Positions 298 to 63,756 are shown, numbered from the stretch's first letter. The stretch is 64,000 nucleotides of DNA from Macrostomum lignano (GCA_002269645.1 NIVC01003721.1:62001-126000); one strand, 5' to 3'. Numbers and translations are program-made. The notes: generated by a model not told the origin, from the sequence alone.

Positions 298-1506
298 ACG
301 GAGTTTCCCCTGTCCCAGCTGTCGCAGCTCCGTGACGCAATCTCCAGAGCCCGCAGCGCATCCGAGCTGCGCCATGCTCAGGAGGTCGTGTGGACCACCC
401 GCAGCCGCCTGTACACCGCGATGCTGAAGGACTCGGCATTTCAGCAACTGTATAGTGGCTCCGTTATCTCCATCAACTTTGAGCTACTTGAACTGGACGA
501 GTCTAACCTTGCTGTGCTGCCGGGAGACAGCGGAAGCGGCCCCGAAGGCGATGACAACGCTCCGAACAGCGTCATGGTCGCCACGAACGACGGGCAGCTG
601 GTGCTGGGGTACGGAAGCACTTTGTACTGCCGGAAGGGCCTGCGGGCGGACTTTGACTTGTACTGCAATGGACTGGATAGGGGTGAGACCGGCCTGGATT
701 GGTTGAATTAGTGACCGGATTGAGATGTGATGATGGATGTACTTACTCACTGGCCTGGGACATTGAGGCGCCAACCGACAGGAGCGGCCCACAATGAGAT
801 AGGGGCGCCTACCAAGAGACAGGGGGGCCAACCAAGTGACAGGGGCGCCCACCAAGTAATAGGGGAGCCTACCAACTGACAGGGGAGCCTACCAACTGAC
901 AGTGGCGCCAACCAAGAGACAGGGGCGCCAACAAAGACACAGGGGCGCCAACAAAGACACAGGGGCGCCAATCAAGAGACAAAGAGCGCCCACGAAGAGA
1001 TAGGGGGCGCCCACCAAGATATAGGGGGCGCCCACCAAGATATAGGGGGCGCCCACCAAGAGATAGGGGGCGCCCACCAAGTGACGGGGCGCCCACCAAG
1101 AGGCCAAATATTTGCACCCATTGAGGTTGCAGCCCGTCCAAATAAAGTTCCCGCACTGTTTTTCAGTCCCTACATATAATTGCGAATTCTTTGCGAATTT
1201 TCAGCGGACTTCTCATCCGAGACCCTAGCTGGTCTGTGCTCAAGCCTGGTGATCGGCTTCCTGTCTCAGCTTCTAGCCACCGATGGTGAGCAACTGGCCG
1301 CAATTCCTGAGCAATCGTTGTCGTTGTTCGTTTCGCTCGACTGTTTCAGCGGCACCAGTTTGAGTCCGTGCTCAAACTGCGATTTGGAGTCGCAATTGTC
1401 TGCCAGTCTCCAAAGCCTCATCAGCGAGGAGCTGATGCTCAGGCATCCGTTCTATTCCGAGGGCTGCCCCTACGCTCTGCTGAAGAGGAGAGTGCGATTG
1501 GATTGA
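298..1506 (+). CDS. Last two exons (298-682, 1205-1506) of an incomplete host gene; product uncertain, weak resemblance to a NAT16/HisAT-like acetyltransferase C-terminal region
   Basis: AG|ACG acceptor at 297/298, G|GTGAG donor at 682/683 and TTTCAG|CG acceptor at 1204/1205 give a phase-1 join (…NGLDR-A-DFSSETL…RVRLD*). Codons are GC-rich and AATAAA occurs near 1592. The product call is weak inference. Confidence 0.6.
768..1098. repeat. 20-21-bp minisatellite (AGGGGCGCCAACCAAGAGAC)n in an intron; same family as the array at 54224-54570
   Basis: Tandem units visible; their reverse complement matches the units at 54.2-54.6 kb. Confidence 0.9.
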
Positions 1507-5800: not shown

Positions 5801-8800
5801 AGAGTCGCCGACGGCGCCGGCGGCGAATAGACATCGAAACAACCGAAGGCGCATCACGCAACCGAAACCCCTTCAGGTTTCAAAACTCAGGACACCACAA
5901 TCAGCCCGGAGGAGTCGATGAAGAAGTTCAGCGACTGGTACACCGCGGACGCCACCTACCGCTGTCTAGTGCGCCAGTACCACGTGCTCGAGGCCGAGCC
6001 GGGGCAGACTTCACTGGACAATCTGTGGTCGCAGTTCAACCCGGCCAGCTGGCCGAGAGGACGCCAGCCCGGCTCCTATCGGACGCTGGCCAGGTGGGCC
6101 GCCGGGTCGGACGCTGACGCGACGAGGCGCAACAGCTACGGCTACCTGCAGAACCAGCTGCACTTCCAGAAGGGCGACAACGGGCCAAGGGTTTGTGAAT
6201 AGTTTATAGAATTTTTTTATTTCGCTTCAAAATTCATTTATCAAACTGAAACTGGATGCCCAGTGTCCACCATCGCGCCATTGGTGTGTAAAGGTGCTGA
6301 TGTCTGCGTGATTTCAAAAATCCAACTCGAGGTCCATCCTAGAAAGTAGAAGGCATGAGGGGGCTTCTGGGACAAAATTTTTCACTTCCTCCATAATCCC
6401 ATTAAATCCATCTATATTATCCCTGACAGAATCAGAAAAAAAGGGGGGTCGCACTCGCTCACAAAACGTCCTCCATAATCCCATTAAATCCATCCATATT
6501 ATCCCGACAGAATCATGAAAAAGTGGAGGGGTCGCACTTGCTCCGAAAACTTCGAACATAATCGTATTAAATCCATCCATATTATCCCTGACAGAATCAG
6601 AGCAGGTGTCCACTGATACCTGTTATGTTCACTGACACTGACATAATCCACTGACATCCACCCATAACATTTCTAAAACAATCAGAAAATAATCTGCATT
6701 CTTCTCCACACATTCAATCCGCAACGTGCTACCACATCCCTAAGACTTTAAATCATCAGCGCAGGGTCCTCACCCTTTGAAAAAATTAAATTCTCAATAA
6801 AAATGTTTCCAGTTGTCTCTCCAGGTTCTTATTACAAAGCGCACGAGCCTAATTACAAGAGTAAGTACCGATGCAAACTAGAATGCAGCGAGTACATGAG
6901 AAAATATTGGCCCGATGTTGATATCAATGCCCCTAATATTAATCTAGCTCTTCAAAGACACTGGTTTCATAAGTACGGAGTAACCTACGTAAAAGATTAC
7001 GACAGCTACTATAACTTTGCAGAAATCATTAAGCAATTGTGATTTCTTACATTCTCTCAATGATCAACGTCAATACAAACTCTTCACCGTTGAAATCAAC
7101 ACCTACCCCATCTTCAGTCTCAAACTGTAGCACAATCTCGTGAATCTCCTTATTACTCAATACAACTCTTTTCACTGGATTTGGTTTCTCTACCACCATC
7201 TGTCCTCCAGCAACAGAGTTGGAGATGTTGTACAAAATATTCGTTCGCTTTCCCTTAAATACCCAATCAAGACTGAGATTGCTTCTGATTAGAATATTCA
7301 AACCCTTTACAATGTCTGCAATATTGGGTGCTAAGAACAAACCGCTTACATTTTCCCGGGCCATTTTAACGGTCCCCGATGCTTGAGTGGCGGTCCGCGC
7401 CGCGGATTCTGCCTTATAAACTTTCTTCTCGAATCCCAGTTCCCTATACCAAGTGTCATCTTTAAACTCAACCTCCGCATCTTTGTGAACTTGCATGACC
7501 ACTCTCATTACAGTGAGATCATAGGTTAGTTTGACAGGGAACAGTTTCTTCTCTGGCTTACTCGCATCAGGTGTCTCAAAATGGCCTCTTTTAGTAAAGA
7601 CATTTTCTAGAAAGTTATTGTAGGTATCCACACTTTGCGTGCTCACATGGAATACCACAGGGTCTGCTGCTGCGCCTTTCCATTTGTAATAAAACTTATT
7701 ATTTGCTGCCATCACATTGGGAACGTTTGACCAACCAGTGAAGTCGTTAAGATAGACATGGTAATTAGCACCTGGATCCAGGCGAATCGCCTGCTCTAAT
7801 TTTTCAACAAATATCCCGTTTGAGTCATTAATTCGCCCGGTTATTGTAATAGGAATGCTCTCCTTAGAGTGTGAAACAATGTTATTTAGTCTTTCGGCTA
7901 TAGCTTCCATTTTTTGTCCTAAAAAATATTTAAACTTTACTGGATGAATTGTTGATCATGTTAAGCTTCACCTTCCTCTCAAATGCATAGACAATGTACA
8001 GGTCCACGGGTGTTGCGGTAGTCCTCTCAATGTTAGTCACGATATTCACAGGGCTGTTATCAGTAGGCATTTGTCTGGCAGACACATCAGCGCCAAACAT
8101 CGGATATAGAGTTCCATATTGAAGAGCAGTGATAGCAATTCCATTGTTCTCTTTCACAGCCAAGTCGACCAACTCGCTGTAAAATTTGCTAATCTTGTTC
8201 TGACTGAAATCTCCATTTTGTGGCAGTGCAGGGTAAAGATTATCACTGATTTCATGCTGAATGGACCGCACGTCTCCATGCATGTAGCGTATAATGCTAT
8301 TTGGGTTTCTCATATTAATAATGATATACCTTGGATTGCTGCATGATCCCTCTTTAATGCAGATGTTTGTTCTAGTTTCGTTTCGCTCATCTCTACACAT
8401 GTAGGCTGTGTATGCAACATCAATGTCCTTCTCTATTGCCTTGAGATAATCCGCTTTTAGTGCAGTCTTTGGCTCAATGACTTCCAAATACAGCTCGATT
8501 CCGGTTAGCTTCACAGCCATCCCAGTGTGGTCCGCCCCAGTCCACAACACTCTACTGCGATCATCTCTAGTCAGTCTAAATGTGTAGCTAAAGTTACTAG
8601 TCAGTCGATTAAATGTATTACAGAATCCACTCATGAATCTCAATGGTACAAATACATCAACAGACCGATACAGCGGGTTCTTAGCAGCATCATCAGCACC
8701 TTGCAATGCATAGTTGTATCTCTTCTTCCTATTTTTATAACCACTGTCATTGATATCTCCTTCTTTTTCGTCTGCAATAAAACCCGCACCACTTCCCAAT

Positions 8801-11800
8801 TGAATAAAATCAGGATTCTCGATTAAACAATGAGCGTCATAGACAATTCCAAAGTTGGCGATTCGCTCCAACTCAGTGCTCCCATTCGATACACTAAACT
8901 CCTTGAACATATACGCCCAAAAGTTACTGATCAGAGCCACATCCGCATCATGCTTGTCAACGTTAGCACGAGCCGCATCCGCACCACCCTTTGTCTTGAA
9001 TTGAAATGTCATATGGAAGCCGCTCTTAAGACTGTGCACACTAACCAAAGACGAACATCCATTGTATGTAAATGTCAGTGTTTGACCAGGACCAAGATTA
9101 GTTTCATTCTGATTTTCCTGACTGGGAACTCCCACCCGAGTCGCTTTGATTGTGCTATTATCACTCAAAATAGGCTTGTTAATCTTGTAGAAAACTGGTG
9201 TCAGTGGGTCGTTCATTTTTTAACTAAAAATAAAATAAAATAAGAAATGAAGCGAAAAAGTACACAGCAGATATCTGAATTGGAGAAGCTAGCACAAGCA
9301 GAGAAACGAGTTACCGGGCTAATAAATAAGGAGCAACAATCCTACAATGAGTTTGTCCAAGCAGCCACAGAGTTTCATAAGCCCGGGTATGGAGAAGCTA
9401 AGAAAAATATTGATCAGGTCAAAGAAACTATCGACGACATACAGGAAACCCAGGTGCAAAAGGCCTTGGGCAAAATTCCAGAAGCACCACAGATACAGCC
9501 GCAACCACAGACACAACCGCAACCACAACAATCACAACCACAACAATCACAACCACAACAACAGCAACTAAAAGTGACCGATAACATTTTTGGACCAGTA
9601 GAGCGTGTAGAACATGATGGGAAATATGTATTTGGAATAAGTGTGTGGAGAAGAAACATTTATAATGACCCAGTGGAATATTATATCGACATAAATAAGA
9701 AACATATTTCTGTTGTTAAAGGCTCGGAAACTAAGAGCATTCCTTTCACAGAAACCTTACTGAATTTTATGACCAAGAACCAAGAGAGAATCTCGGACAA
9801 ACAGCTAAATAACTATAGAGATCTAGTGACTTTTGCTCTTGCTAGAGATATAGAAATACTAAAGGCCCCAGAAGTCCTGAGACTTATGTATGATAACGGT
9901 GTCAACCTGACTAGATTCAAAAAGTACAAACACTTTAAACAATGGTTCGGTTTGCCAGATCAGGCGGAAGTCATAAAATATCTAGAACAACCACAACAGC
10001 AACAGCAACCGCCACAACAGCAGCAACATTCCATAGAAGAACAAGTACTCAGTCAACTCGAGCAGTTAGACCCTTTGAAAGTGGCTGAATATAAGAAACA
10101 AAACCCGACAGACTGGCAACACTTAGAACAACACTCTCCAGATCGAATGAACAGAATCAAGCAGAGTTTTCACACCTCAACAAAGACAGGCACCACATGA
10201 CAGTTCCATCTCTGAAAGTGAGCAGTCTTTTGCATCACCTCCCCAGCAGCCACAAGCCCAACCAACTCCACAACCTCAAGACCAACCGCCCTCAACTGGA
10301 AAAGGAATTTCTGAAATCTACAAGCGAGTAGCGGTTCTTCTAGGAGCAGCAAAGACCGGAATGAAAGATGAAAATAGAAAAGAATTTGTCAACATCCTGG
10401 ACAAGATGCTTGAGAGAAAATATATCGATAAAAGAGCAAGAGAACTTTTGCTTTCACGGTTTAACAAAAAATAAATTTCTATTTAAAAAGATGCCAATTA
10501 TTTTCGAAAAAGACATTGACAAATACTATGACAAAGAGGAACTTAATCTCATTAAACGTGGATCTGGACTTTTCCCTGCAGGCCACTATCCAAGAAAAGA
10601 ACGCTCAGGGAACGGTCTTGCCGATTTGATCGCTCAGGGGGCCAAGATTTTTAAGGTCATTGGAGAGAACAAAGAGAACATCAAGAACGTTGCCGAAGCG
10701 GCTGGCAGTGTAGCCACAGCAGCCAAAAAGATAAAGGATACTGTAACACCTAAACAAGAGATTCAGCCTCCACTGGCCCCGCTGGCTCCATTGGCCCCAA
10801 ATCCAGACAGTGTGGACCCTGCAGTCTATGAGAAGATGAGGGCTAGCATTAAAAAAGGAAGTGGTTTCAAATTTGACTAAAGGGTACTTTCCGAGGGTAC
10901 AAGACTAGTCCCGAAATGACACATCTAAGTCCCAAAATGACACATCTAAGTCCCGAAATGACACATCTAAGTCCCGAAATGACACATCTAAGTCCCGAAA
11001 TGACACATCTAAATTATTTATTATTTAAATTTTTTTTTCATCATAGAAAAAATTGACTTTTCAAAAGACTTCAATCCTCACTGGACGCGTAATCAGATTA
11101 AGTTTTCTCATCACGAGTCAATTCCGAGTCACTTCAGATGCATTGTTGTTGGTTCATCAGGTTCAGGTAAAACATTCAGAGTCTTTAACATGCTTCTTAG
11201 ACCTGGCTTTATCGACTATGACACTCTGCACATCTACTCTCCCACACTGTATCAAGATGAGTATAAAATGTTGATTTCTGGATTGCAAAACAAACTGCAC
11301 AAAGAGGACATTATTGCATGTTTTAATAACCAAATGAGCCTTCCCAGTAACCCTGAAATTGTAGCTGCTGAATATGCAAAGCACCTCAAAGACAATGAAA
11401 AATGGCAGAACATTAAAGTGTTCACCTATGGAGATCCACAGGCTGATCCAAAGACCAAACTTCTACCCCAACCAGATGAGCTAGAAAAGGGGAGAAAGCA
11501 TTTGATCGTCTTTGATGATTGTATGACAGGCCCACAGAAGCAGATAGAAAACTATTTTACAAGAGGGCGACATAACAATTGCAATGTAATTTACATTGCA
11601 CAGAATTGGTTCGAGCTCCCGAACAAAACAATTCGTGGGAACTGCAATCTGATTCTCCTGTTTCCAACCATTCCACAGGACAGGCTAAAAAGATTTTACA
11701 ATGAGGTCATTGCGCCTGCCTATTTCATAAATCCAACAAAAAACTCAAGCAGAAAGATTTCACAAGAGGAATTCGTTAATCTTTGCTATGACAAGTGGAA

Positions 11801-14800
11801 TCAGCCTTACCAGTTTGTGATTATCAGCAAAGACAAAAGAACTGTAATTTAAAATTTGCTATTAAAAGATGTCGATAAACTTTGCAGGTGAGTCAACTAC
11901 AGGCAACAGCACTCTCACAACTTCCTTCCTTGATAAGCGCTACATTAACACTAATGAAGAGATCCCAGAGATCAAACTGAATAAAAACAGACTGAAACAA
12001 TTAGAGCGCTCCATGCACCAGTTGCAAATAAACATGGAAGATCTCAGGCTTAAAGTAGCTAGGCAGAAGTTTGAAAGTGATAAGCTTTATGTGCCGTTGT
12101 TAAACGCAACTAATGAACTAAGGTCAGAAATAACTTCGATAGTCTCGCTAATCAACGGCTTGAGATCATCAGTTAATCTTCTGGGAAATTCCACTGATAG
12201 ACGAATGCGTATTCTCGAAGGAGGAGTTTTCACAAACACAGCTAAAGTAAATAATTTAGAAGAGTTCATGAACCAGTCAACAGCGTTGCATGATAGAATT
12301 AAAGAAAACGTCGCAACCAACACAGTTAAAGTCAATAATTTAGAAGAGTTCATGACTCAGTCAACATCGTTGCATGATAGAATTAAAGAAAGACTTGATG
12401 CATTAGAGAGAAACGATGTATCACACAGTAGCTATCTAAACGGAATGTATAGCTCTTGGGGTAAAATAATAAGGAGGCTTGATCGTCTGGAGAGAACACT
12501 CAATCTTCGTGATATTGCTATTGATGAAGCAGAATCTGCTGCTCGTCCGGTCATGTCTACAGATCGAGTAGAAGGAGCTCTGGACCCCGACGGAGTAATC
12601 CGGCACGCTCTCAAACGTCAGCCGCCCAGCCGCTGCCTGCTGGACTCGCGATCCTCCAGCGTCAAGAGAGCCGCCTAGACAACCGGCGGTGCAGATGGAA
12701 TTATCAAAAAGAAAACAGATCTTTCAACCGGATAGTTTTATAATTTTTATTATTTTTTCTAGAGAAAAAAATGGCCCAACAAAATTCTCTATACGATCAG
12801 TCTCAATATGCTGAACCTAAAATACCGACAGCACCAAACTCAATGGCACCGAATTCGAACACACAAAACCTGGCACCGAATCTGAATGCATCGAATCTGA
12901 ATGCACCCAATATGAGCAACAAAAACTCTACCCGTCATTACTTGTAACTCTCAACAGTTTCGACTGGTGGAGATTCAAAAAATGCGCGATGATCTTGAAA
13001 AAAATATTTTCCACAACACAAAGAAAATTAAGCGCTATGACAACCACTGTAAATTTTTCGACTACAGCAATATATTCTAGGATCTGTGTCTGTTCTATCT
13101 GGATCTGCTGCAGCTGTCTCAGTGTTGCCAGCCATCACAGCCCCAATCGCAATTCCACTTGGTTCAGTAGGTGCTGCATGTGGACTTATTTCAGCAATTA
13201 CTGGAGCAGTAGCGCGAAACAGGCGAAAAAAACTAAAGCAGCTACAGGAGAAGCAAGTAAAAGAGAAAGGGTGCACACTTCAATCATAGGGTACATTTCA
13301 AGGGCAATCGAGGATAAGTTCATTTCAGAGGATGAGTTCAAAACCATTCAGGATCTTTATGAACAATCAATTCGAATGAACTTGAACATGGTCGGTACTG
13401 ATGACATGAGTCAGCTGAAAATGAACTCGAGAAAGTTTTCAACATTATGTGGAAAGAAAGTCGGCGAAAAATTCGGCAAGAAATTCGGCAAGAAGGACGA
13501 CGAGAATGCACAATGAACCCTATGAAACACAGCCAAGAATAATTTCCTTGTAGGTCTTTCGTGTTTTGGTCATTGCATACAAAACAGTCATGCACAGCTC
13601 ACCGCAAATATCACTGCTAAGACCTTGGAGAATAAAGTCTGAGCGATAAATTTTTTTATTTTTTTCCCCTTCATATAATTTCTTAGCTCTTCTGGTACTG
13701 CCGTCCCATAGCTATCGAAGTAATAACACTTGTGCTTGCGATCGGATCAATCACCCAGCAAACCCAATGAGATCCTGGCTTATCGGTGGTGTCAAAGTTC
13801 ATGATGCCGCATTCCTTTCTTAGAGGAAAATCGGGCAGAGTGTCCCTCATAAATATTCCTCTAAAGTTTGGGATTTCCAGTTCGTTAGCCAAATCTTCAA
13901 GAAAGTTATTTGTCGTCATTTTTTTATGAGGTTTATTAAACTTTCTCTTAAACCTAAACCCAATCTCCTAATCTCCTAATCTCCAGTGCCCGAATCTAAC
14001 TTCCACCTCCTAAGCCTAATCTCCAATGCCCGAACGGTAGACTGTTAATGTTGTCATCAAAAATGAATCTCTTGTTATCTGCACCTGACAGTCCAATCTT
14101 CTTTTGCTGAATTGTGTGAATAATATGGTTTTTAGATTGTAGCTTTGAGAACTCATGTGATGTCTTTTTGTTGCAATTCAAGGCGTCTCTGTATTCAGCT
14201 TCATTAATTTCCTTCCTAACTACACGTTTCGGAATTCCCTTTGATTTTTTGATTGGGTCTGACGACTCACATTTTATAAAATAGGACTTTGCTCTCAACC
14301 CAATGAATTCAGTGATTATGTCACCAGCAATCTCGTCCTTCATTTTCCCAATCACTTTCTTGTTAGTGGCGTCAAACACTTGATCGCCATTCTGTGTCCT
14401 GCAAGATTCATCATACTCAGACAAGTCAAACAAATCTTTTTGCTGCAGCATGTCCTGATAAATGTCTTGTTTGAATGTCCATAATAAAACTGTCTGTGTC
14501 GTGTACAAGAGTTTCATTTTATCCTTGTACTGCTGCTTCATGCCATAGAAGAACTGGTACATCAGACGTTTTGATTCGTCGAGAACAGTGACACCTGTAT
14601 AGATCGGCTTGCGCAGCGTCACCTTGGTTTTGTAAAATATGATCACACCTAAGTAGCTATTAAAGATATGGAGTTCTTTGAATGTTGGCTTTGACATATT
14701 TGCCTGAATAACAGCAGGCTCTGATGAGGTAACAAGTTTCAGGTTTGTTCTTTTCCGCTCATTCTCAAGAGTCTTGCCATAGACAGAGTTGTTGGCCAAC

Positions 14801-17800
14801 TTAAAGAGGTTCTTGTCAAAGTCGTTGGTTGCTTTGGTCCTAAACTGGGTGTTCTTATCAATGTAGGGTTTCATCCACGCTTCCTCTGTAAATGTAAGAG
14901 CCCGGTGAACTTTGGTGACCCTGCAACCAAGTGAGATAAAATACTGAAGCAGTTTGTAATGGATTTTGTAACGTGTCTTGTTGTTTAGATTCTGTGTTAG
15001 TTTCTCTGTATGTTCTTTTTCTGTTCCTGACAGGCCAAGTTCCATTATTATCATTGGGAGTTTCGATTATTTTCGGGCACTTGATGTTCTCTGGGAAGGG
15101 TGGAAAGTCAGAGAAATAGTCGTGAAGCTCTGGTGGAATGTAAACATCAACTTCATAAATGGCAGCCAATGAAAAGTCCCGTTTGAATTCTGATGAGGGT
15201 AACCATCGAAAATCTCTAACTGGAAGATCTTGACTCATCGCCCACCCGTAGAGATTATTAGCGTCCAAGTAAGTAATGTAGTTTGAGGGCTGCTCCTTAT
15301 TGTAAGATTCAATGTAGGGATTGTTTGCTTTTGCATATCTAGTGCAAATTGAGATCCCCCTCGCTTTGATGATTCGACAAAATTGTACATGTCAATGTCT
15401 GTAAGAAGTTCAATGTACCAATCTGGATCTTGATCCCATTTCATTTAAGCAAAGATTCCCAGCTAGTGGCAGGCAGAGACACATAATGTGCTGGATCGAG
15501 GCCATATGCTGTGTACCAGGTATATCTGAAGGTTTCAAACACATCGCGCCAGCAGAAACACATCTGTGAAGAGGTAAAGCAGGTGATACTGGAAGAAGTT
15601 TTGACAATTAAAGTAATTATAGACATGCTTCGCGTGCTCATAGTCTTTGTCAGAGATTCCAGAGTCTGTTAGCTTTGAAAAGAACTTCTCCTGTGGTGGT
15701 AAACCTTCTTCAAATACGTGATACCCAGTAATATTTTCATAGGGGTAGAAGCCTTTGTTCTCAGGAGTTTAAATGATTCATCACTGTTGTTAATTTTACT
15801 TGCAAACATCTTTGTATATGTACATTGTTCATCTTTTAGATTCTTGCTTAGTTCGTCTAGACTGGCAGCTAGAAATTGATATGAATCCTTCAGTCTTATT
15901 TTACCTTACCCGAATTATCCTGTTTAATATCAACACACTTAAACTTCTCCTTGTTCTCTGCGATGCAGTCAAGGTGTATGTCTGGAATCATGCCGATTTT
16001 TTCAACTATTAAATGCATGTCATAGTTCTTTGCGTTGTGACAAAATATCGTTAGATCATGAATGTTCGATTTTAGCTTTAGATTACAGGTGTTATGCGCT
16101 GCACCTCTAAATTTCCCAGTAAAGTGGCAGTGGTCCCTAACGGTGGGGTTTTTAATATCAGTGCAAGTTAAATGTTTCCTGCAGATGTGGCAATGAGTTG
16201 CTGATAGGAAATTGCTTTCATCCTCCTCAGTCATCATTATTGAACAGGTTGAAGGGTGCTAATCACTTTTTGCAACTCTAACATTCTGGCAATAAACTGC
16301 TCCACACACTGCTCTCCAAAGAAATAATTATACTCAACAAGTCCTTTTGTATTAATAAAGGCATATGCTACTGAATTGGGGACATTTTTGAGTTTGAGTT
16401 TGTTTTTGAGTTTCTGGCATGATTGAGCATTCGAAATCAGCATATACAACAAATGGGAGCTTCTCCATCTTGTGATAGTTCTTAAACCGGAGATACTTCT
16501 CTTCAGCTGAAGGAAGAGAGCAGTTTGTCGGGTGATCCTCGCATGATAATTCATGCTCTGTTAGTTTTCAAAGCGTTCAGGTCCACTGTAATGCTTAAGG
16601 CACAAGCGGCAGATGGCAACAGCCTCGTGATGATATTCAACTGCTTGTGAATGAGTCTTGAAAGATCTTTAATCCAAACATAGTGAGCCTCCTCTAGTAA
16701 ATTACCAATCACTAGAAGATCCACTTCATCCGCCTTTTCCCCTCAGGATCTAAAACGTCTTTGCTACATCTGACCGGTTGAACTTCTCAGTTTTTTCACT
16801 CCACTCAAAGACTGTGATTCTAATTTTGTTATTAAACACTTCTTCTAGCTTTGGGATCTGAGAGATCGCCAAGCCTCCTTTGTCAAACCTGATTCCCTTC
16901 TTTTCGCATTCGATGAGATAGTAGTTGAAATAATTTGATAATTTGAGGTTCTTTCGGGTGGTGAGGACACTAATAGTGCAGAAAGAACTGCCCATAGAGC
17001 ACAGCAATTGTCTTTATTTTTAACATTTATGCAGCTTTTTTGCCGGCTAGCTTATGCGGGGAGCTCTATATAAGAGGAGGCTTTAAGTGGGTCATATTTC
17101 ATGACCATGACGTCGCTCTTTGAATCCCTCCCACGACCCATCCGGAACCTCTGGATGTAAACGCTTCAATTTTCTTAGTGACATCTTGAAGGAAAGGATC
17201 CAGTGTGTCAGTAGGGGTGAATGGTTTTGCCTTTGTTGTCATGTAATACTCGAGATGCTCAGTGGGTTTGCAGGCATATAAAACGCAATCTTGAATGATA
17301 TCTGTAGTTTAAAGTCTTGCGTGTTTTGAGTGTGTGATCAACAACTGATTGGATGCTGTCTTTATAGTCGTAGATGTTTGCGGTGGTATCCTTAATTGGG
17401 ATTGTGTACTCTATGTAATGTTCTGTAAACTTCCTCTGTGCAAAATTAATCTCTTCAATGGCAAGCTCCGACTCTTTTAAATGGATTAATTGCTCTAATT
17501 TCTCTTGTTCCTGCTTATTTTGTGGGTACTTTGCTTTTTCACCAGTGAGAGTTTCGTATTTGTTAACTAAGTTGCGACTCCTCTCTTGGTGTTCCTTTGC
17601 AGAATTTTTTATAGGCGCATACTGGTTGGATTCTAATTGATTGATGATTTCCAACTGTTTTTCATAGCTTCCCAGGTGACCAGGGTCGGTGTTAAACTTT
17701 GTTGTATGCTTCTCTTAGTGAATTACTTTTGTCTTGAAATGACGCCTTTTGAAAAATATTTGTTGACTAAATCTTTGCTGGATTAGCTTTTGCATTTTTC

Positions 17801-20800
17801 TCTAAAATAAAAAAAAATTTTGAGGGTGACCACCCTGATAGAAAAGTTGAACTGTTTCTACATCCTATCAGTAGTATTAGGTTTATGAAGCTGATAAATG
17901 GGGTTTTAAACCTCATCACATGCGCATTATTGTAAACCCAGCATTGTGCAGTGTCATGATGGCTTTGACAATGTCAGACTTGCTTACAGAATTTTCAATG
18001 CTCAAAATCATCACGATCGGGCAGCCTCAGGGACCTCTCCTGCCTTAATTGTTATACCTTTGTCTCTTGCAATCTTTGCAATTCAAGCTGGTGGGCTCTA
18101 TCATTCCCAGCTTTAACAGCAGTTGCTACACCTCCAGCTACACCACCTGCGGCACTTACAGCGCCTGCAATGATTCGGAATAAGAGCTGCTAATGGTAGG
18201 ATTCCTCCTGACTTTTCATCTGTGATGCTGTGTCTTTGCTCATTACACTGAACTTTGCTGCACGGGATCGATTTTTACTTTGGCACCTTTAATTGATATA
18301 AGACTGGTTCTTTGATTCAATGATTTTATTGAGTTTATTGATGGTTCTGGTTTCAATCTTTGTCATTTTTATTTTAATATTTTAATTAATTTCTGTGTCA
18401 GCCGGTATCACTAGGAGTTCAGCTCTAGTGAATGACCGCGTGGGGATTTAGGGTTAAAGGCTGAGATAAAAAGTAATAGTCACCAGAGTCGGAGGTAAAA
18501 TGTCTGTCTATTTTATGTACATCAAGGCTGAAGTATGGATCTGTAGCTCTTCTTTTAGTGTTTTCTCTAGCTCTCCAGTAGATATAAAAAGCGTAGAAAC
18601 TCAGAGTTTGTCAGTATATATGGTGATTCAACTCCTGGAAGCTTAGGGTAGTTCGAGGTGTCTGTTCTATGAGATGCCTTAAGTTCGACAGTGTCTTGTT
18701 TAATTGCATGGGACGGTTTCAATCCAGTCATACGTGTGACTTCATTGTTCAGTTGCTCTATAACAGTGGGGAGCCGGTCTGTCCATTTTGAATAGTACTG
18801 ACCACTTTTTAGTTTCAGCTCCTCAGCTGTCTGCTAGTGAATAGCCTCTTGGCTAGAGTTAGATTGAATCTCTCAACGTACGCTTGGTCTCTGTGCAAGT
18901 TTGTTCTGCCATAGCGAATCTCTGTGTCATGCTTATGTAGAAGTGATTTCACTGCACCCATGAATTCTTTGCCAGGATCAGTCATAAAGGTTTCAGGGTA
19001 GCTAAGGGGTGAGTTTTTATAAATATCTTGGAGGGCGGCTGCAACTGCTTCTGACTTCTTCGTCTTGAGTGGGCGAGCTTCCTTATATCTGGAAGCAACG
19101 TCTGTAATTGTAAGAGCATACTTGTAGCCCGAGTCATTGGGGAGAAACAGAAGATCTGCTTGATGCGCCTCATTAGGTTTATAAATACTGAAATGGGGCC
19201 TTTCAAATTTTACTGGTGGGAAATAGACTTGAAAGACAGCCTGCTTAGAGAGCCATTTTTCTACTGTAGCTTTTGGTTCCTTACTCAGCTCCATGAGTTT
19301 ACTAACGGCATTTTTTGCCTACAAAGAATCCTTTGTCGCTGTAGTAGAGTTTTTTAAGTTTCTGATCTGTCATTTTTTTAAAAAGAAAATTTAAAATAAA
19401 ATAATGCAACGCTCTGGTGGTAAGTTAGATTCACATGGACTGATAGAAAAGCTTCCTCATCCAAACAAAGGCTGGACACTTCCCGGCTATAAATATTGCG
19501 GGCCTTTGAATCCACTTGAAATACAGTTAGATACAAACGATAATCCAAATCCTGGGCATGAGCCTGTGAACGAGCTAGACTCTGTCTGCATGTGGCACGA
19601 TGTTAAATATAGGGATTTTCCTGAGGAGAAGAATCGCTGGGACAAAGAAATGCTTAGAAGACTAGACAATATAGGGGCTTCAAGCGGATTTCGTGAGTCG
19701 ATCGCTCGGAAGCTAGTTAAAGCTGTTATTTTTAGTAAGGCAAAACTGGGGTTGGGGGTTGAAGGCGAGGGTGGGTGCTTGGGGAGAGAGGGCTGGTGCA
19801 CGAGGAGAGAGGGCGGAGGCTCAGGAGCGGGGTTTATTTTGTGCGCTCCTAACAAGAAATTGGGAAGACTGCTGAAAGAGCTGGGGGTAGAGAGAGACGC
19901 TTGAGTCGGGAAGGGCATGAGCAAGTGTGGATTTGAGTAAGTACAGTTTTTTATTCCCTAAAGAGTTGCGCACAAGAGAGATTCTCATTCTTCAGAGAGC
20001 TAAGAGCAGAAAATGAAAAAAAAGTCAACCGCTTCACCGCCATTGGCATGCATGGACTGCTTGGGATTCCTTGATTGATATTGATTATTGGCCAAATTGC
20101 GAGGCCAGTTGGCCCGCCGAGTTGGCCTCGGCCCGCCGATTTGGCCTCGGAATGTGGCCCGCTTTGTTGGTCTATACGGTATGAAGATATGGGGGGGGTA
20201 GAGAGGGGCGCTTGAGTCGGGAAGGGTTTAACTATTATTCTCAACCCTGGCCAAACGCGACAGCTGCATTTGAAATGTTGAGAAGCAGAAGGGGGGTGGG
20301 GTAACTGCTATTGCTGAGGGGGGGGGGCGTAGCCCTCTAATCGATTTTGCGAATGTACAAGTTCCACGTGTGCATTCCTTTCCGCTTTGACAACCGGAGG
20401 GAAGGAAGCGGGTGGAGGGAATTGATCGCTCGGAAGCTAGTTAAAGCAAGCAAGAAAATTCAGCTCATTTTGCTCGCACACGTTCTTCGTCGCGCAATAC
20501 TGCACCGTTGTGGCTGCTGATTTCATTATGTTGTAAGTTTATTCATTTTTTACTTACTGAAATTCTATACTGTGTTAAGAATTGAAAAATCTCTTATTTT
20601 GATTAAATCTTTGTTTTTAGTTCACAAAAAATTACGTTCTACTCGACCGACCTAGAAAATCTCCATGGTCGCCTTGTTGAAGGATTAGATGCCAACGAAC
20701 CGGCATCAGAGAGAATTCAAGAAGTTCTCCATCATTTCTTCAATGAAAAAGTTGAGAACCAGCGAATTTGTTCAAGAGCGGCCATGGAGACCCAGGATAA

Positions 20801-23800
20801 CAACTACGCCATGAGAACCGAAATGGTGTTTGACGAACTTCGCCGATCATTTGTTGCTGATGAAGATTCACTTCTTAGTTATCAACAAATTTTTTCCAGG
20901 ATTTTATCAATGTAAGCTACTGATAGTAGTCTTCTAAACACTTTCCTGGATCTCCAAGATTTTTTTCCAGGATTTTTTTTAAACTCGTGCCAATTCCTGA
21001 CAATACAGGAATTCCTGACAATACAGGAAAGTCTTTTACTGGATTTTTTCCAGGATTTTATCAATGTAAGCTACTCATAGTAGTCTTCTAAACGCTTTCC
21101 TGTATCTCCAAGATTTTTTTTAAACTCGTGCCAATTCCTGACAATACAGGAATTCCTGACAATACAGGAAAGTCTTTTACTGGATTTTTTTCCAGGATTT
21201 TATCAATGTAAGCTACTCATAGTAGTCTTCTAAACACTTTCCTGTATCTCCAGGAATTTTTTAAAACTCGTGTCAATTCCTGACAATACAGGAATTCCTG
21301 ACAATACAGGAAAGTCTTTTACTGGATTTTTTTCCAGGATTTTATCAATGTAAGCTACTCATAGTAGTCTTCTAAACACTTTCCTGTATCTCCAGGATTT
21401 TTTTTAAACTCGTGCCAATTCCTGACAATACAGGAATTCCTGACAATACAGGAAAGTGCTGTTCACAAAATGACTGGGAGGAAAATCAATATTATTCTGG
21501 ATCCGAAGAATATCGATTTTGGATTGTGTGAGGATCTACAATATCTTGTTCTTTCTCTACCTTATTCATTTCCAGCCTTGCAACTAAGCTTGCGCGTCGC
21601 GGACCAGCATTAGCTGGGGTAATTGGGGGTGTGTGGCGACTCCCCCAGTCCTTGGACTGAACAGCCGTACGCAGCCTTCAGATCTGCTCTTTCCTCCTTT
21701 CCTTTCCTTTGTTTTATGTAAATATACTTGTGAATAAATGAACTCAGTATGTTTTTTAGTAAGCTTTTGTGTTTGCTTTTCGATTTCTTCTGTTGCTGGA
21801 GGACAGATGGTGGTAGAGAAACCAAATCCAGTGAAAAGAGTTGTATTGAGTAATAAGGAGATTCACGAGATTGTGCTACAGTTTGAGACTGAAGATGGGA
21901 TGGGTGTTGATTTCAACGGTGAAGAGTTTGTATTGACGTTGATCATTGAGAGAATGTAAGAAATCACAATTGCTTAATGATTTCTGCAAAGTTATAGTAG
22001 CTGTCATAATCTTTTACATAGGTTACTCCATACTTATGAAACCAATGTCTTTGGAGAGCTAGATTAATATTAGGGGCATTGATATCAACATCGGGCCAAT
22101 ATTTTCTCATGTACTCGCTGCATTCTAGTTTGCATCGGTACTTACTCTTGTAATTAGGCTCGTGCGCTTTGTAATAAGAACCTGGAGAGACAACTGGAAA
22201 CATTTTTATTGAGAATTTAATTTTTTCAAAGGGTGAGGACTCTGCGCTGATGATTTAAAGTCTTAGGGATGTGGTAGCACGTTGCGGATTGAATGTGTGG
22301 AGAAGAATGCAGATTATTTTCTGATTGTTTTAGAAATGTTATGGGTGGATGTCAGTGGATTATGTCAGAGTCAGTGAACATAACAGGTATCAGTGGACAC
22401 CTGCTCTGATTCTGTCAGGGATAATATGGATGGATTTAATACGATTATGTTCGAAGTTTTCGGAGCAAGTGCGACCCCTCCACTTTTTCATGATTCTGTC
22501 GGGATAATATGGATGGATTTAATGGGATTATGGAGGACGTTTTGTGAGCGAGTGCGACCCCCCTTTTTTTCTGATTCTGTCAGGGATAATATAGATGGAT
22601 TTAATGGGATTATGGAGGAAGTGAAAAATTTTGTCCCAGAAGCCCCCTCATGCCTTCTACTCTAGAACTATATAACTTTTGATATTTCCCGGGCTAAAAC
22701 TACTAATAGTAACGTAAATTCATGTCTGAATTTTCGTCCTATCTTACGGGTTCCCATGTCGCAGAAATCCATCTCGACAACCTTGATCTCTTGAGTTCTC
22801 GACAATGCCTGTCGTATGTACTGTAGTGTCAGACAGTCTTACGCCCGAGCACTGTAACCTGATTGCAGCTTCACTACCAGTTTGCTCCCGTGCGAAACGC
22901 CAACGGCTTTGCGCTGAAAGAGGGCCACGGCTACATGGTAGACTGGGTCAACGTCCCGCCGCACGAGAGCTCGACTGACTTTTTCAAACGCCGACCGGAT
23001 CTCAGCAAGCACCTTGACCTAGTTAATGAGGAGAGAGAGTTGGCTACCGGTGAAGGTAGGCAGGCCCTGTACAATGGTGAGGGCGCGGTCCAGCTTATCA
23101 TTGTGTCCAAGGACGCCTGGTACAACAAAGGCATAAGCTCAACGCTGAGAAAAGTGGACACCGTCCATGATCTTATAAAAAACAACTGGAATTTGACGGA
23201 TGTAAGAACTCATTATTCTTATAGTCTCTATTTTATCCAATGCCTGGCATGATCCTGAACAAACTTTTACTCCAGTTCCTCTTGCTCAACTGGGGCAACC
23301 TGCAATACTGGCTTGGCGACCTGGGCTACCTGGCCAAGGGCGAGAAAGTGTTCATACAGAGCGGCCACCCCGACGTGCTGATTGGCGTCTGCCGGCATTT
23401 GCAAACTGGCAAGTTCTACGTGTGGAACGAGATGAAGACGGCCGAGCCAGAGAGTCTGCAGTCTGTGCAGTCTCGCTGGGTAAGCGCATGGGCCAAGGGT
23501 CGGCAAACTTTTTACCTCGATGTCCAGATAGAGAAACCAGCGCATGACTACGGGCCAGAGGGGGAAGAGGAGAGAGAAGAGAGATAGAAGAAGAGAGAAT
23601 AAATAAGAGGAGGTGAAGAAATCGAAGAGATGAGAGGAGTGAAGGGAGAGCAGAAGAGAGGACAGAAGAGAAGGAAAGCAGAGAGGAGATGGATGATTAG
23701 AGAGTAGGGAGCTGAGAAGAGGCACAAACCCTAAGCGGGCCGGATTTCTATTCTGAAGTTTCAAAGGACCTCTCTTGGATAGAGAGGCTTTGTGGGCCGC

Positions 23801-27265: not shown

Positions 27266-28746
27266 AGAGTGGGCTACAGAAGCCTCAGAAAGCAGGTCCA
27301 AACCAAAAAGCAACAAGAGCTCAGACGCGGCAGTTGCTGCCAGTATATCTCAGGCCAGAGGAGAAGGGCAGGAAAAATTTCAAAGGCGGGACAGAAGCAG
27401 GTCCCGCCGCGCGCGGCAGTGCAGTGTGTGCTGAATTTTATTTTCAGTTCTGTTTCACCTGTAAAACTCTGTAGTAGCGCAAAGCTAAAAGAGGCGCCGC
27501 AGCAGGCAACAGCGCCGCAGGAGAGAATTTGGGAAGATGTGCGCTCCGGCCTTGCTTTATGCTTAGTCAAAGACACGGACAAGCAAACAAACGAACAAAA
27601 AGCAAAAGTGTTGCCAAAAAACACAAACAGAGAGAGAGAAAACCACAGCGGACAAAATGGGAAGTAGAAGGCGGAGTCGAGCTCCGCAGCAGCCCAGCGC
27701 AGGTCTGCATGTACAAAATAGGCCTGTTCGCAGTGCGAGCCGAATCTGGCTGGGCTGGCGGGGGCGGGCGGCGGCAGAAAAAAGCAGCACAAGAAAAGCA
27801 AAGTAGAAGAGAAAAAAACGGAACACGCACGCAAAAAACCGCAAAAAACTCGGTGAGGGGAGGGTGCGGCATGGGTGACAGAAAATTGAGGCAAAATTCA
27901 CGGATTTCATTTCTTCTTCTTGAAAAAGAGACCTCCTGCGCCGGACATTACGAGCTAGTTTTTGAAAAAGCACTGGCGACAGACATGAAGCGAAAACAAA
28001 TTGCTGAATAAAAGCGAGGGACTCAATGCCAAAATGGAGGCTTATATTAAAAAAAATTGGAATATAGCCGACTTTGTTCAACACACAGTACTAGCAATAG
28101 TATTTAATGGCTCTGCAAAAGAAGACTTCGGGGTCAAGGTAGAAATCAAATTGTTGTTGAGCGCAGACAACAGCGGTCAGAAATCAATTTACAAGCAGAA
28201 ATTTTCACCAAAAACGCTTTTTTTGATTTTGAATATTCACGCCGCCTTACTGCCGGTCTCTGCTAGGCCCAAGTTCAATGCCCGGGGTAGTTCCGCCGAC
28301 AAATGAAAAAATAGAGGGGAGCGAGACAGACAGAACAGAAAAAAAACAGACAACGGCAGCGCGCATTGGAACAGCTGAGGAGAAGCATAGCGGGGGCGGA
28401 ACCTTTCTAAAGCGCAATTTACAGACAATATTGAACTTCTTGACTGGCTGTCAAAGAGAGTGCGTGTGCAACAGAGAGGCACAACATCAAAGAGAGAGAC
28501 AGAGAAAAAAACGCACAAGCACACAAAAAAGCAGAAAGAAAAAATCTCATCAAATGACACCGACAAACAAAATTTTGTTTAAACGCGCCACAACAGCAAA
28601 AAATGTGTCTCTGTCTGTCTGTCCTGTCCGATGGGAGCGAGAATACAGTTAGGCGTTCGGAGGGCTGAGAAGGAGGAGAGGAAGGAGGTGTGGGCTGAGA
28701 AGGAGACGGAGTCGAGCATGTCACTGCCGGAGCTCGGAGAGGCGGC

Positions 28747-63756
<35,010 letters not shown>

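What the first reader, a model, noticed from the sequence alone, without database searches (positions are those of the whole stretch)
6345..22661. Complete, precisely bounded adintovirus-like Polinton with a full virion gene set
Seen: perfect 6-bp TSD, AGTAG/CTACT ends, TIRs about 99% identical, and genes for pPolB, integrase, ATPase, protease, MCP, penton, pX-like and PLA2 proteins. Established: a 6-bp TSD, AG…CT ends and this core gene set define Polintons/Mavericks, and capsid plus adenain plus PLA2X-type genes characterise adintoviruses. Inference: a young proviral insertion of a probably uncharacterised lineage in an invertebrate host; novelty cannot be confirmed without searches.
Basis: partly seen in the sequence, partly recalled or inferred. 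Interest (0 to 1): 0.9.

Follow-up and report, generated by a model that had tools for sequence, protein, structure and literature searches.

The report
Defective Polinton provirus in a flatworm
This is a real, sharply bounded 16.3-kb Polinton/Maverick (adintovirus-like) virus-like element in the genome of the flatworm Macrostomum lignano, but this copy is not complete: its polymerase, integrase, protease and several other genes are riddled with frameshifts and stops, while its capsid genes are still open.

Summary
The sequence-level observation holds. Two 873-nt inverted repeats (9 mismatches, no indels) end in AGTAGA…TCTACT and are flanked by a perfect 6-bp duplication, CTAGAA. Inside are recognisable genes for pPolB, rve integrase, FtsK/HerA-type ATPase, an adenain-like protease, a double-jelly-roll major capsid protein, a penton, a parvovirus-type PLA2 and a weak pX-like protein.

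Predicted folds of the capsid protein and penton match viral capsid and penton proteins. The host is Macrostomum lignano: a neighbouring six-exon gene is 94-100% identical to its proteins.

The reading "complete, young provirus" is only partly right. Frameshift-aware comparison with relatives counts at least 12 frameshifts and about 5 stops in pPolB. The protease has 2 frameshifts, the integrase at least 2, and the pX-like gene 5 frameshifts plus 3 stops. Another gene has 1 frameshift, and the ATPase lacks a start codon. Capsid, penton and PLA2 genes have none.

The breaks are not introns and not homopolymer errors. They are far denser than the indel-free repeats allow, so they most likely predate the last replication or insertion.

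Verdict: a defective, non-autonomous copy of a sparsely sampled adintovirus-like lineage, and a new member of a known kind.

The parts
6339..6344 (.). Left copy of the 6-bp target-site duplication (CTAGAA)
   Evidence: Read directly. Identical to 22662-22667 and abuts the repeat end.
6345..7217 (.). Left terminal inverted repeat, 873 nt, starting AGTAGA
   Evidence: 98.97% complementary to 21789-22661 with no indels. It holds 83-bp subterminal tandem repeats at 6387-6601, ORF79 and the 3' end of the penton gene.
6803..7042 (+). ORF79, a 79-aa gene of unknown function carried in the repeat (left copy)
   Evidence: the two copies encode identical proteins although they differ at 5 nucleotides, all third-position synonymous transitions (P about 0.004). 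No Pfam hit and no match in related loci.
7047..7910 (-). Penton (minor capsid) protein, 287 aa, open
   Evidence: 11 homologues at 38-64% identity. AlphaFold2 pLDDT 69. Foldseek matches mavirus penton at 4e-08, adenovirus penton bases, and giant-virus (NCLDV), virophage, MELD-virus (midsize eukaryotic linear dsDNA virus), adomavirus and adintovirus minor capsid proteins. 0 frameshifts and 0 stops against 4 comparators.
7930..9216 (-). Major capsid protein, double jelly roll, 428 aa, open
   Evidence: Pfam DJR-like domain in all 10 family members, best 1.8e-16. The model is low-confidence (pLDDT 54), but every top Foldseek PDB hit is a double-jelly-roll capsid protein, with PBCV-1 Vp54 at 2e-10. 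0 frameshifts and 0 stops. 12 of 19 differences to a 95%-identical second copy are synonymous.
9247..10465 (+). Gln-rich protein of unknown function, conserved next to the MCP in relatives; broken by 1 frameshift
   Evidence: A 446-aa single-frame homologue in L005 aligns over the whole span with 1 frameshift. Partial homologues in L001 and L002.
10491..10880 (+). Small conserved virion-module protein, 129 aa, open, function unknown
   Evidence: 83% identical to the L005 fragment and 36-42% to the L006 149-aa protein, which sits next to the MCP. 0 frameshifts. No Pfam hit.
10907..11012 (.). 21-bp x 5 tandem repeat directly upstream of the ATPase gene
11013..11852 (+). FtsK/HerA-type (Pox_A32) packaging ATPase. 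The body is open, but no ATG precedes the Walker A motif (start codon apparently missing, 1 break)
   Evidence: Pfam PF04665 at 3.3e-06, 27.2 bits against a 22.8-bit cut-off. Walker A and B motifs read. 0 frameshifts against the L003 ATPase. First ATG lies after Walker A.
11869..12678 (+). Coiled-coil protein, 269 aa, open; candidate fibre or scaffold-like protein (inference)
   Evidence: The N-terminus is homologous to the L002 218-aa protein that follows the penton there. Only weak coiled-coil Pfam hits. Internal 84-bp duplication.
12771..13516 (+). Putative membrane protein gene, apparently broken by about 3 frameshifts (read by eye only, no comparator)
   Evidence: Open pieces in three frames, including a hydrophobic Gly/Ala-rich stretch. 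Low confidence.
13520..13919 (-). Adenain-like cysteine protease; broken by 2 frameshifts
   Evidence: Three pieces in three frames are collinear with a single-frame 119-aa ORF in L003. His, Asp and Gln...Cys motifs are visible. Pfam Peptidase_C5 is seen only weakly, in the comparator (E 0.11).
13996..17795 (-). [quoted passage not shown]
   Evidence: E 1e-92 to P0010 (PF03175) and 974 homologues. The C-terminal half shows 6 frameshifts and 1 stop with 5 of 8 comparators. The N-terminal half shows 6-7 frameshifts and 4 stops with two independent comparators. The frameshifts are not introns and not homopolymer-linked. 96% of conserved columns are retained. An Endonuclease VII-like zinc motif lies inside.
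17919..18372 (-). pX-like small core protein gene; broken by 5 frameshifts and 3 stops (single comparator)
   Evidence: Homologous to the L006 124-aa protein (52% identity, locally 94%), which has a weak Adeno_PX hit at E 0.042.
18428..19373 (-). Retrovirus-like (rve) integrase; broken by at least 2 frameshifts in the core, and about 2 more seen only by reading the frames
   Evidence: Pfam rve at 1.4e-10, 41.8 bits against a 32.6-bit cut-off, on the largest open piece. 52% identical to the L003 integrase with 2 frameshifts. Bounds.
19404..19904 (+). Parvovirus-type phospholipase A2 protein, 166 aa, open. Its 3' end may be altered by one insertion
   Evidence: Pfam PF08398 at 1.8e-13. Weak matches to the AAV VP1 N-terminal region. 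Homologous to PLA2 genes next to the integrase in L004 and to one in L007. A GC-rich 0.7-kb segment bounded by a 24-nt direct repeat lies at or after the ORF end.
19905..20965 (.). Stretch without a recognisable gene
20966..21457 (.). 142-bp x 3.5 tandem array, present on the right side only
21789..22661 (.). Right terminal inverted repeat, ending TCTACT. It holds the second ORF79 copy (21964-22203, -) and a duplicate of the last 57 penton codons (21789-21959, +)
22662..22667 (.). Right copy of the 6-bp target-site duplication (CTAGAA)

Best explanation
This is an endogenous, defective (non-autonomous) copy of a Polinton/Maverick of the adintovirus type. It sits in intergenic DNA of Macrostomum lignano, about 5 kb beyond the 3' end of an RRM-protein gene.

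From established knowledge of Polintons and adintoviruses, an intact family member would work as follows. The pPolB copies the linear genome by protein priming from the terminal inverted repeats. The rve integrase inserts it with a 6-bp staggered cut, which gives the duplication seen here. The double-jelly-roll MCP and the penton build an icosahedral shell, and the FtsK/HerA ATPase fills it. An adenain-like protease matures it, and the PLA2 helps cross a membrane on entry.

This copy keeps the ends and open capsid, penton, PLA2 and ORF79 genes. Its pPolB, integrase, protease, pX-like gene and at least one more gene are pseudogenes, so it cannot replicate or integrate on its own.

Shown: the bounds, the gene identities, the break counts and the uneven spread of breaks.

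Inferred: the broken genes carry far more indels than the indel-free repeats. The damage was therefore mostly already present when the element last replicated and inserted, so it was copied and integrated by proteins supplied in trans from intact relatives.
For: - Bounds, repeats and duplication.
- Gene identities.
- Host. Six exons are 94-100% identical to M. lignano A0A1I8IG10, and the gene ends at 27640.
- Break counts come from a frameshift-aware protein-to-DNA alignment. It gave 0 breaks in the four controls (MCP, penton, ATPase, coiled-coil gene) at 34-73% identity.
- Counts per gene: pPolB at least 12 frameshifts and about 5 stops; protease 2; integrase at least 2; pX-like 5 frameshifts and 3 stops.
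- The frameshifts are not introns: no DNA-only gap of 30 nt or more lies beside them, with one exception.
- They are not homopolymer-linked: 27% against a 23% background.
- Break density is 5.2 per kb in the replication, integration and maturation genes and 0.34 per kb in the other genes (binomial P=1e-07).
- No indel occurs in 2 x 873 nt of repeat, although 6.6 are expected at the density of the broken genes (P=0.0014).
- The family is multi-copy. A 598-bp contig from another sample is 93-95% identical to the MCP gene and is itself damaged.
Against: - No intact helper copy has been seen. The window holds no second copy, and the genome could not be searched.
- If all genes were dispensable in a trans-mobilised lineage, the capsid genes should have decayed too. 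Their intactness (P=1.4e-05 for penton plus MCP at the other genes' density) needs an extra explanation such as selection or recombination.
- Counts for the pPolB N-terminal half and the pX-like gene rest on comparators of only 34-52% identity.
- Conserved pPolB residues are retained as well as in intact relatives (96% against 94%). The damage is therefore almost purely indels, which is also what an assembly artefact would look like.
Confidence: 0.6

Rival explanations
1. Mosaic copy. The left part (left repeat to about 12.7 kb: penton, MCP, neighbouring virion genes, ATPase) was recently acquired by recombination, template switching or gene conversion from an active relative. The right part (protease, pPolB, pX-like, integrase) comes from an older, decayed copy. 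The element is still defective, but the contrast between halves reflects two histories rather than selection.
For: - Break density changes sharply between two contiguous blocks, 0.34 against 5.2 per kb (P=1e-07).
- The two repeat arms differ mainly by synonymous changes in ORF79 (5 of 5, P about 0.004). That is expected if the arms stem from two variants that diverged while functional.
- The MCP shows purifying selection against a 95%-identical copy, with 12 of 19 differences synonymous.
- Relatives show shuffled gene orders and module exchange. The L002, L006 and L007 layouts differ, and L007 carries a helicase.
Against: - The open PLA2 gene and the right repeat lie beyond the damaged block, so at least two exchange points are needed.
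- One frameshift and a missing start codon also occur in the 'good' block.
- No second copy is available to show discordant phylogenies.
Confidence: 0.2
2. The provirus is intact and young. The frameshifts and stops are consensus errors of a long-read assembly in a repeated region.
For: - The damage is dominated by 1-2-nt frame changes.
- 96% of conserved pPolB columns are retained.
- The repeats are 99% identical.
- M. lignano is known to be very repeat-rich, and the window is full of minisatellites.
Against: - The frameshift sites are not enriched at homopolymers.
- About 8 in-frame stops are present as well.
- 5.9 kb of other coding sequence and 1.7 kb of repeats in the same element are essentially free of indels. 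Random consensus error would not spare them.
Confidence: 0.1
3. An intact provirus inserted and then decayed in place. Host-level selection, through co-option of the capsid, penton and PLA2 genes, kept those genes open.
For: - MCP, penton, PLA2, the 129-aa gene, the coiled-coil gene and both ORF79 copies are open.
- The changes in ORF79 are synonymous only.
Against: - The indel-free repeats are hard to reconcile with 21 or more frameshifts arising after insertion (P=0.0014).
- A virion-module gene and the ATPase start are also damaged.
- There is no evidence of expression or of orthologous conservation.
- Purifying selection in the MCP is equally explained by recent viral activity of the family.
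Confidence: 0.07

Closest known systems
Adintoviruses (proposed family Adintoviridae; Alpha / Mayetiola-class virion module), Starrett et al. 2021, PMC8502044
   Same: - Animal host.
- pPolB plus rve integrase.
- Adenovirus-like virion set: double-jelly-roll MCP, penton and an adenain-like protease.
- FtsK/HerA ATPase.
- A parvovirus-type PLA2 gene, which the paper gives as characteristic of Alpha-class virion modules.
- Inverted terminal repeats and integration into host DNA.
   Different: - Here the PLA2 domain and the pX-like protein are separate genes on opposite strands, not one PLA2X fusion.
- Sequence identity to anything in the databases is low: MCP at most 77%, to unnamed metagenomic contigs, and pPolB at most 51%.
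- Flatworms are not mentioned in that paper.
- This copy is a pseudogenised endogenous one.
- Placement in the Alpha or Beta PolB clades could not be tested.
Vertebrate Mavericks (Barreat and Katzourakis 2021, PMC8097293)
   Same: - 6-bp duplications.
- Size within their range of 12.7-24.6 kb, and repeat length within their range of 46-1447 bp.
- An end motif close to their 5'-(AGT)2//(ACT)2-3' (here AGTAGA//TCTACT).
- Two gene modules.
- Most of their copies (96%) are degraded, often with the pPolB fragmented.
   Different: - Flatworm host.
- The gene order differs.
- A PLA2 and a repeat-borne ORF79 are present.
- By their definition of 'intact' (all core ORFs open, plus repeats and duplication), this copy is a fossil despite perfect ends.
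Nematode Polintons (PMC10748475) and other invertebrate Polintons (Kapitonov and Jurka 2006, recalled from own knowledge)
   Same: Self-synthesising element with pPolB, integrase, protease and ATPase, long inverted repeats, a 6-bp duplication and 5'-AG ends.
   Different: No close sequence relationship was found. The named pPolB hits come from cnidarians, molluscs, wasps and a hemichordate at 40-45% identity.
Mavirus virophage and adenoviruses (structural comparators)
   Same: The penton model matches the mavirus penton crystal structure best (4e-08), then adenovirus penton bases. The MCP model matches double-jelly-roll capsid proteins of the same virus kingdom.
   Different: Sequence identity is about 10%. 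Genome size, host and lifestyle all differ. The similarity is of fold only.

Membership tests
Polinton/Maverick | [quoted passage not shown] | tested here: met
   The 352-aa open piece hits 974 proteins, best E 1e-92, many carrying PF03175. Homology spans 14017-17245. The gene is present but broken.
Polinton/Maverick | Retrovirus-like (rve) integrase gene | tested here: met
   Pfam rve at 41.8 bits, above the 32.6-bit cut-off. 52% identical to the integrase of Polinton locus L003. The gene is present but broken.
Polinton/Maverick | Long terminal inverted repeats with 5'-AG...CT-3' ends and a 6-bp target-site duplication | tested here: met
   873-nt repeats, ends AGTAGA...TCTACT, duplication CTAGAA on both sides.
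Polinton/Maverick | Morphogenetic module: double-jelly-roll MCP, penton, FtsK/HerA ATPase, cysteine protease | tested here: met
   MCP. Penton. ATPase. The protease rests on collinear homology and motifs only, with a weak Pfam C5 hit in its comparator.
'Intact' (potentially autonomous) Maverick in the sense of PMC8097293 | All core ORFs uninterrupted, plus repeats and duplication | tested here: not met
   pPolB, integrase, protease and further genes carry at least 21 frameshifts and about 8 stops in total.
Adintoviridae (proposed) | Animal host with adenovirus-like virion proteins (hexon-like MCP, penton, adenain) together with PolB and integrase | tested here: met
   The host is M. lignano. 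Folds of MCP and penton. The adenain assignment is only partly supported.
Adintoviridae, Alpha-class virion module | PLA2X gene: a PLA2 domain fused to a C-terminal pX-like domain | tested here: inconclusive
   The PLA2 domain is clear (1.8e-13). The only pX-like similarity lies in a separate, broken gene at 17919-18372 on the other strand and is weak. The native 3' end of the PLA2 gene may be disturbed.
Adintoviridae (proposed) | PolB and MCP fall inside the Alpha or Beta adintovirus clades in a phylogeny with named references | not testable with these tools
   No named adintovirus sequences could be fetched, and the database hits are unnamed or 'uncharacterized protein'. A phylogeny would also need a joined-frame pPolB, which was not built.
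Adintoviridae (proposed) | Evidence of a free, linear viral genome (coverage falling to zero at the repeat ends) | not testable with these tools
   This needs read data. Only short related contigs from metagenomes and read archives were seen.

The most novel reading that the evidence does not exclude
The family contains a helper-dependent lineage that has lost its own polymerase, integrase and protease but keeps its capsid, penton, PLA2 and the repeat-borne ORF79 under purifying selection. That would be a satellite-like, capsid-encoding parasite of intact Polintons. Alternatively, it could be a set of capsid genes on the way to host co-option in a flatworm. In either case, ORF79 would be a new conserved gene located in Polinton terminal repeats.
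Probability: 0.15. Interest if true: 0.6.

Novelty: new member of a known kind. Interest (0 to 1): 0.3.

Why it matters
- It documents a Polinton/adintovirus-like lineage in a free-living flatworm that is a laboratory model for regeneration. No paper in the searchable library links Macrostomum to Polintons or Mavericks.
- The lineage's capsid protein has very few relatives among 1.84 billion representative proteins.
- It is a clear caution for scans. Perfect ends, a perfect duplication and 99%-identical repeats do not make a provirus complete.
- The uneven decay (capsid genes open, enzyme genes shattered) and the synonymous-only differences in a repeat-borne ORF give a concrete, purely descriptive question for a genome-wide census. 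Are such copies mobilised in trans, are they recombinant, or are they partly under selection?

Tried and rejected
- Nematode host. Pfam hits C_tripleX and XTBD on flanking ORFs turned out to be translations of micro- and minisatellites. This was rejected once six exons matched M. lignano proteins.
- Introns as the cause of the frame changes. Rejected: the DNA is contiguous at the frame changes.
- Homopolymer-type sequencing errors. No enrichment was found.
- Related loci in IMG/VR and JGI metagenome contigs, searched with the MCP and with its alignment. Nothing was found.
- Rfam on the whole window. No hit.
- Sequence search of the PDB with the MCP profile and with a protease piece. Only noise.
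- Pfam on the separate protease pieces and on most accessory ORFs. No significant hit.
- A second copy of the element elsewhere in the window. None.
- Substitution-level decay of pPolB. Conserved columns are retained at 96% against 94% in intact relatives. This test does not separate real recent decay from artefact.
- The 137-aa ORF at 8830-9243(+) lies antisense to the MCP gene and was treated as spurious.

Full report

Yes, for the architecture. An exact search for inverted repeats gives one dominant pair, 6345-7217 and 21789-22661. Base-by-base comparison shows 873 nt with 9 mismatches (8 transitions, 1 transversion) and no indel, which is 98.97% identity.

The repeats start with AGTAGA and end with TCTACT. 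The six bases outside each end are identical: CTAGAA at 6339-6344 and at 22662-22667. The sequence beyond them is unrelated. A 6-bp match at fixed positions has a chance of 1 in 4096.

The element is 16,317 bp at 41% G+C, inside minisatellite-rich DNA of 45-55% G+C. No other copy or fragment lies elsewhere in the window. Each repeat carries 83-bp subterminal tandem repeats.

**2. What the genes are**

- **MCP, 7930-9216(-), 428 aa.** Its own Pfam match to the double-jelly-roll-like domain is weak (7e-05, below the cut-off). All ten members of its family match that domain, best 1.8e-16. The AlphaFold2 model is poor (pLDDT 54). Even so, its 50 best Foldseek hits in the PDB are all double-jelly-roll capsid or scaffold proteins: PBCV-1 Vp54 at 2e-10, SGIV, PM2, PRD1, vaccinia D13, faustovirus and ASFV p72.
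- **Penton, 7047-7910(-), 287 aa.** It gave a better model (pLDDT 69). The best PDB matches are the mavirus penton (4e-08) and then adenovirus penton bases. In the viral structure library it matches minor capsid or penton proteins of giant viruses, virophages, a MELD virus (midsize eukaryotic linear dsDNA virus), adomavirus LO5 and Drosophila-associated adintoviruses.
- **ATPase, 11013-11852(+).** It passes the Pfam Pox_A32 cut-off and shows Walker A and B motifs.
- **Integrase.** The largest open piece passes the rve cut-off (1.4e-10).
- **PLA2, 19404-19904(+).** It has a clear parvovirus-type PLA2 domain (PF08398, 1.8e-13) and weak matches to the AAV VP1 N-terminal region.
- **pPolB.** A 352-aa open piece finds 974 homologues, best E 1e-92 at 51% identity, many of them carrying PF03175. 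The named ones are 'uncharacterized' proteins of sea anemone, pearl oyster, parasitoid wasps, coral, a hemichordate and a planthopper.
- **Protease, 13520-13919(-).** It is recognised by three pieces that are collinear with a single-frame 119-aa ORF in Polinton locus L003, and by His, Asp and Gln-Cys motifs. Pfam Peptidase_C5 appears only weakly, in that comparator (E 0.11).
- **pX-like gene, 17919-18372(-).** It is homologous to a 124-aa protein of locus L006, whose Adeno_PX hit is weak (E 0.042).
- **Further genes.** These are a Gln-rich protein (9247-10465), a 129-aa protein (10491-10880) and a coiled-coil protein (11869-12678). All three are conserved next to MCP or penton genes in related contigs. 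There is also a putative membrane protein (12771-13516).
- **ORF79.** A 79-aa ORF lies inside each repeat.

**3. The host**

A search that included a flanking exon returned Macrostomum lignano RRM-domain proteins at 100% identity. The 485-aa protein A0A1I8IG10 maps to six exons on the minus strand between 38041 and 27640, at 94-100% identity.

The window is therefore M. lignano or something nearly identical to it. The element lies about 5 kb downstream of that gene, in intergenic DNA. An earlier hint of a nematode host (Pfam C_tripleX) was an artefact of translated simple repeats.

**4. The copy is not complete**

The right half has no long ORFs. To count breaks I wrote a protein-to-DNA aligner that allows frame changes. 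As controls I aligned MCP, penton, the 129-aa gene, ATPase and the coiled-coil gene to relatives of 34-73% identity. All gave 0 frameshifts and 0 stops.

| Gene | Frameshifts | In-frame stops | Basis |
|---|---|---|---|
| pPolB, C-terminal half | 6 | 1 | 5 of 8 comparators |
| pPolB, N-terminal half | 6-7 | 4 | two independent comparators |
| Protease | 2 | 0 | |
| Integrase | at least 2 in the core, about 2 more by eye | 0 | |
| pX-like gene | 5 | 3 | one comparator |
| Gln-rich gene | 1 | 0 | |
| Membrane-protein gene | about 3 | not counted | by eye only, no comparator |

The ATPase has no ATG ahead of its Walker A motif. The PLA2 ORF is open, but a GC-rich segment of about 0.7 kb, bounded by a 24-nt direct repeat, sits at or after its end and may be one insertion.

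The frame changes are not introns, because the DNA is contiguous at them. They are not enriched at homopolymer runs: 27% against 23% for random positions.

**5. The pattern of damage**

Using comparator-based counts only, the protease, pPolB, pX-like and integrase genes (5.6 kb) carry 29 breaks, or 5.2 per kb. Penton, MCP, the two neighbouring genes, ATPase, the coiled-coil gene and PLA2 (5.9 kb) carry 2, or 0.34 per kb. The binomial P is 1e-07.

At the density of the damaged genes, 6.6 indels would be expected in the two repeat arms. None is seen (P=0.0014). Most of the damage is therefore older than the last event that made the two ends alike, which for a protein-primed linear element is its last replication.

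Conserved pPolB residues are retained as well as in intact relatives (96% against 94%). The decay is therefore shallow at the substitution level, a few per cent at most.

Two observations point to recent purifying selection in the family:
- Five of the nine repeat mismatches fall in ORF79. All are third-position synonymous transitions, and the two ORF79 proteins are identical (P about 0.004).
- A 598-bp contig from another sample is 93-95% identical to the MCP gene. Twelve of its 19 differences in the gapless part are synonymous, against 20-33% expected. That contig is itself damaged, with one deletion and one stop.

**6. Explanation**

I consider the most likely reading (0.6) to be a defective, non-autonomous endogenous copy. 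It was already broken in its enzyme genes when it was last copied and inserted, which implies replication and integration by proteins supplied from intact relatives.

The rivals are:
- The contrast between the two halves is due to recombination or gene conversion with an active relative (0.2). The synonymous-only repeat differences and the module shuffling seen among related contigs fit this.
- The breaks are an assembly artefact and the provirus is intact (0.1). The stops, the lack of homopolymer bias and the clean neighbouring sequence argue against it, but only reads can exclude it.
- Decay happened in place, with host selection keeping the capsid genes open (0.07). This conflicts with the indel-free repeats.

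**7. Comparison with what is known**

The element meets every tested defining feature of Polintons/Mavericks. It has the gene repertoire that Starrett et al. (PMC8502044) use for adintoviruses, including the PLA2 that they give as typical of Alpha-class virion modules. Here, however, PLA2 and the pX-like protein are separate genes rather than a PLA2X fusion.

Its ends resemble the (AGT)2//(ACT)2 motif of vertebrate Mavericks. Like 96% of those elements, it is degraded, and it fails their definition of 'intact' (PMC8097293).

Placement in named adintovirus clades could not be tested. No named references were reachable, and I did not build a joined-frame polymerase.

The lineage is thinly sampled:
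- The word-indexed search found 9 MCP relatives, the best at 77%.
- The exhaustive search found 99 at E<=0.001 and 5 at E<=1e-30 among 1.84 billion representatives.
- All are unnamed contigs from metagenomes or read archives.
- No paper in the library links Macrostomum with Polintons or Mavericks, and the adintovirus paper does not mention flatworms.

**8. Verdict**

This is a real feature with correct bounds and a mostly correct gene list. It is a new member of a known kind, in a host not yet reported for it, but the copy is a pseudogenised one rather than a complete provirus.

Interest is modest at 0.3. The uneven decay and the selected repeat-borne ORF are worth a genome-wide descriptive follow-up.

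Noticed in passing
window 6803-7042 (+) and 21964-22203 (-): A 79-aa ORF is carried in both terminal repeats. The two copies differ at 5 nucleotides, all synonymous third-position transitions, so the proteins are identical. It has no Pfam hit and no match in the related loci, and looks like a real, selected gene of unknown function.
   Followed up: partly
window 21789-21959 (+): The inverted repeat runs 171 nt into the penton gene, so the right end carries a duplicate of the last 57 penton codons. It differs from the functional copy by 2 nucleotides and 1 amino acid.
   Followed up: yes
window 27640-43321 (-): A host gene for an RBMS-like RRM protein has six exons that are 94-100% identical to Macrostomum lignano A0A1I8IG10. 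An alternative first exon near 43232-43321 matches A0A1I8HNX4. Introns and flanks are packed with minisatellites of 14-, 25-, 31- and 34-bp units and a (CAGG)n run at 35777-36195, which mimic long ORFs and give spurious Pfam hits.
   Followed up: partly
window 15899-16258 (-), inside pPolB: An Endonuclease VII-like zinc-ribbon motif (Pfam PF02945, 9.3e-05) sits inside the polymerase. The same weak hit occurs in the pPolB pieces of the distant Polinton loci L003 and L004, so it seems to be a conserved insert of this polymerase clade.
   Followed up: no
window 19404-20965: A GC-rich (52% against 41%) segment of about 0.7 kb, bounded by a 24-nt direct repeat, lies at or after the end of the PLA2 ORF. 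It may be an insertion or an internal duplication. It has no similarity elsewhere in the window.
   Followed up: partly
window 20966-21457 and 10907-11012: There are two internal tandem arrays. A 142-bp x 3.5 array lies just inside the right repeat only. A 21-bp x 5 array lies directly upstream of the ATPase gene. They may be regulatory or protein-binding repeats, but this was not tested.
   Followed up: no
L008 (ENA ERZ27309238, 598 bp): A contig from an unrelated metagenome assembly is 93-95% identical in DNA to the MCP gene of this element. It is itself damaged, with one internal deletion and one stop. The same family therefore exists in other samples, either as Macrostomum DNA or as a close relative.
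   Followed up: partly
L007 (ENA ERZ26859043, 16-kb contig): A more distant MCP relative (47% identity) lies on a contig with a PLA2 gene and an AAA_30-type helicase. No polymerase was called on the 12 kb of the contig that was fetched, which fits the module exchange known among mid-size linear dsDNA viruses.
   Followed up: no
window 787-982 and 54275-54574: A 20-bp-unit minisatellite occurs in opposite orientation at both places, about 53 kb apart, at 78-83% identity. It is probably a dispersed host repeat and is unrelated to the element.
   Followed up: no
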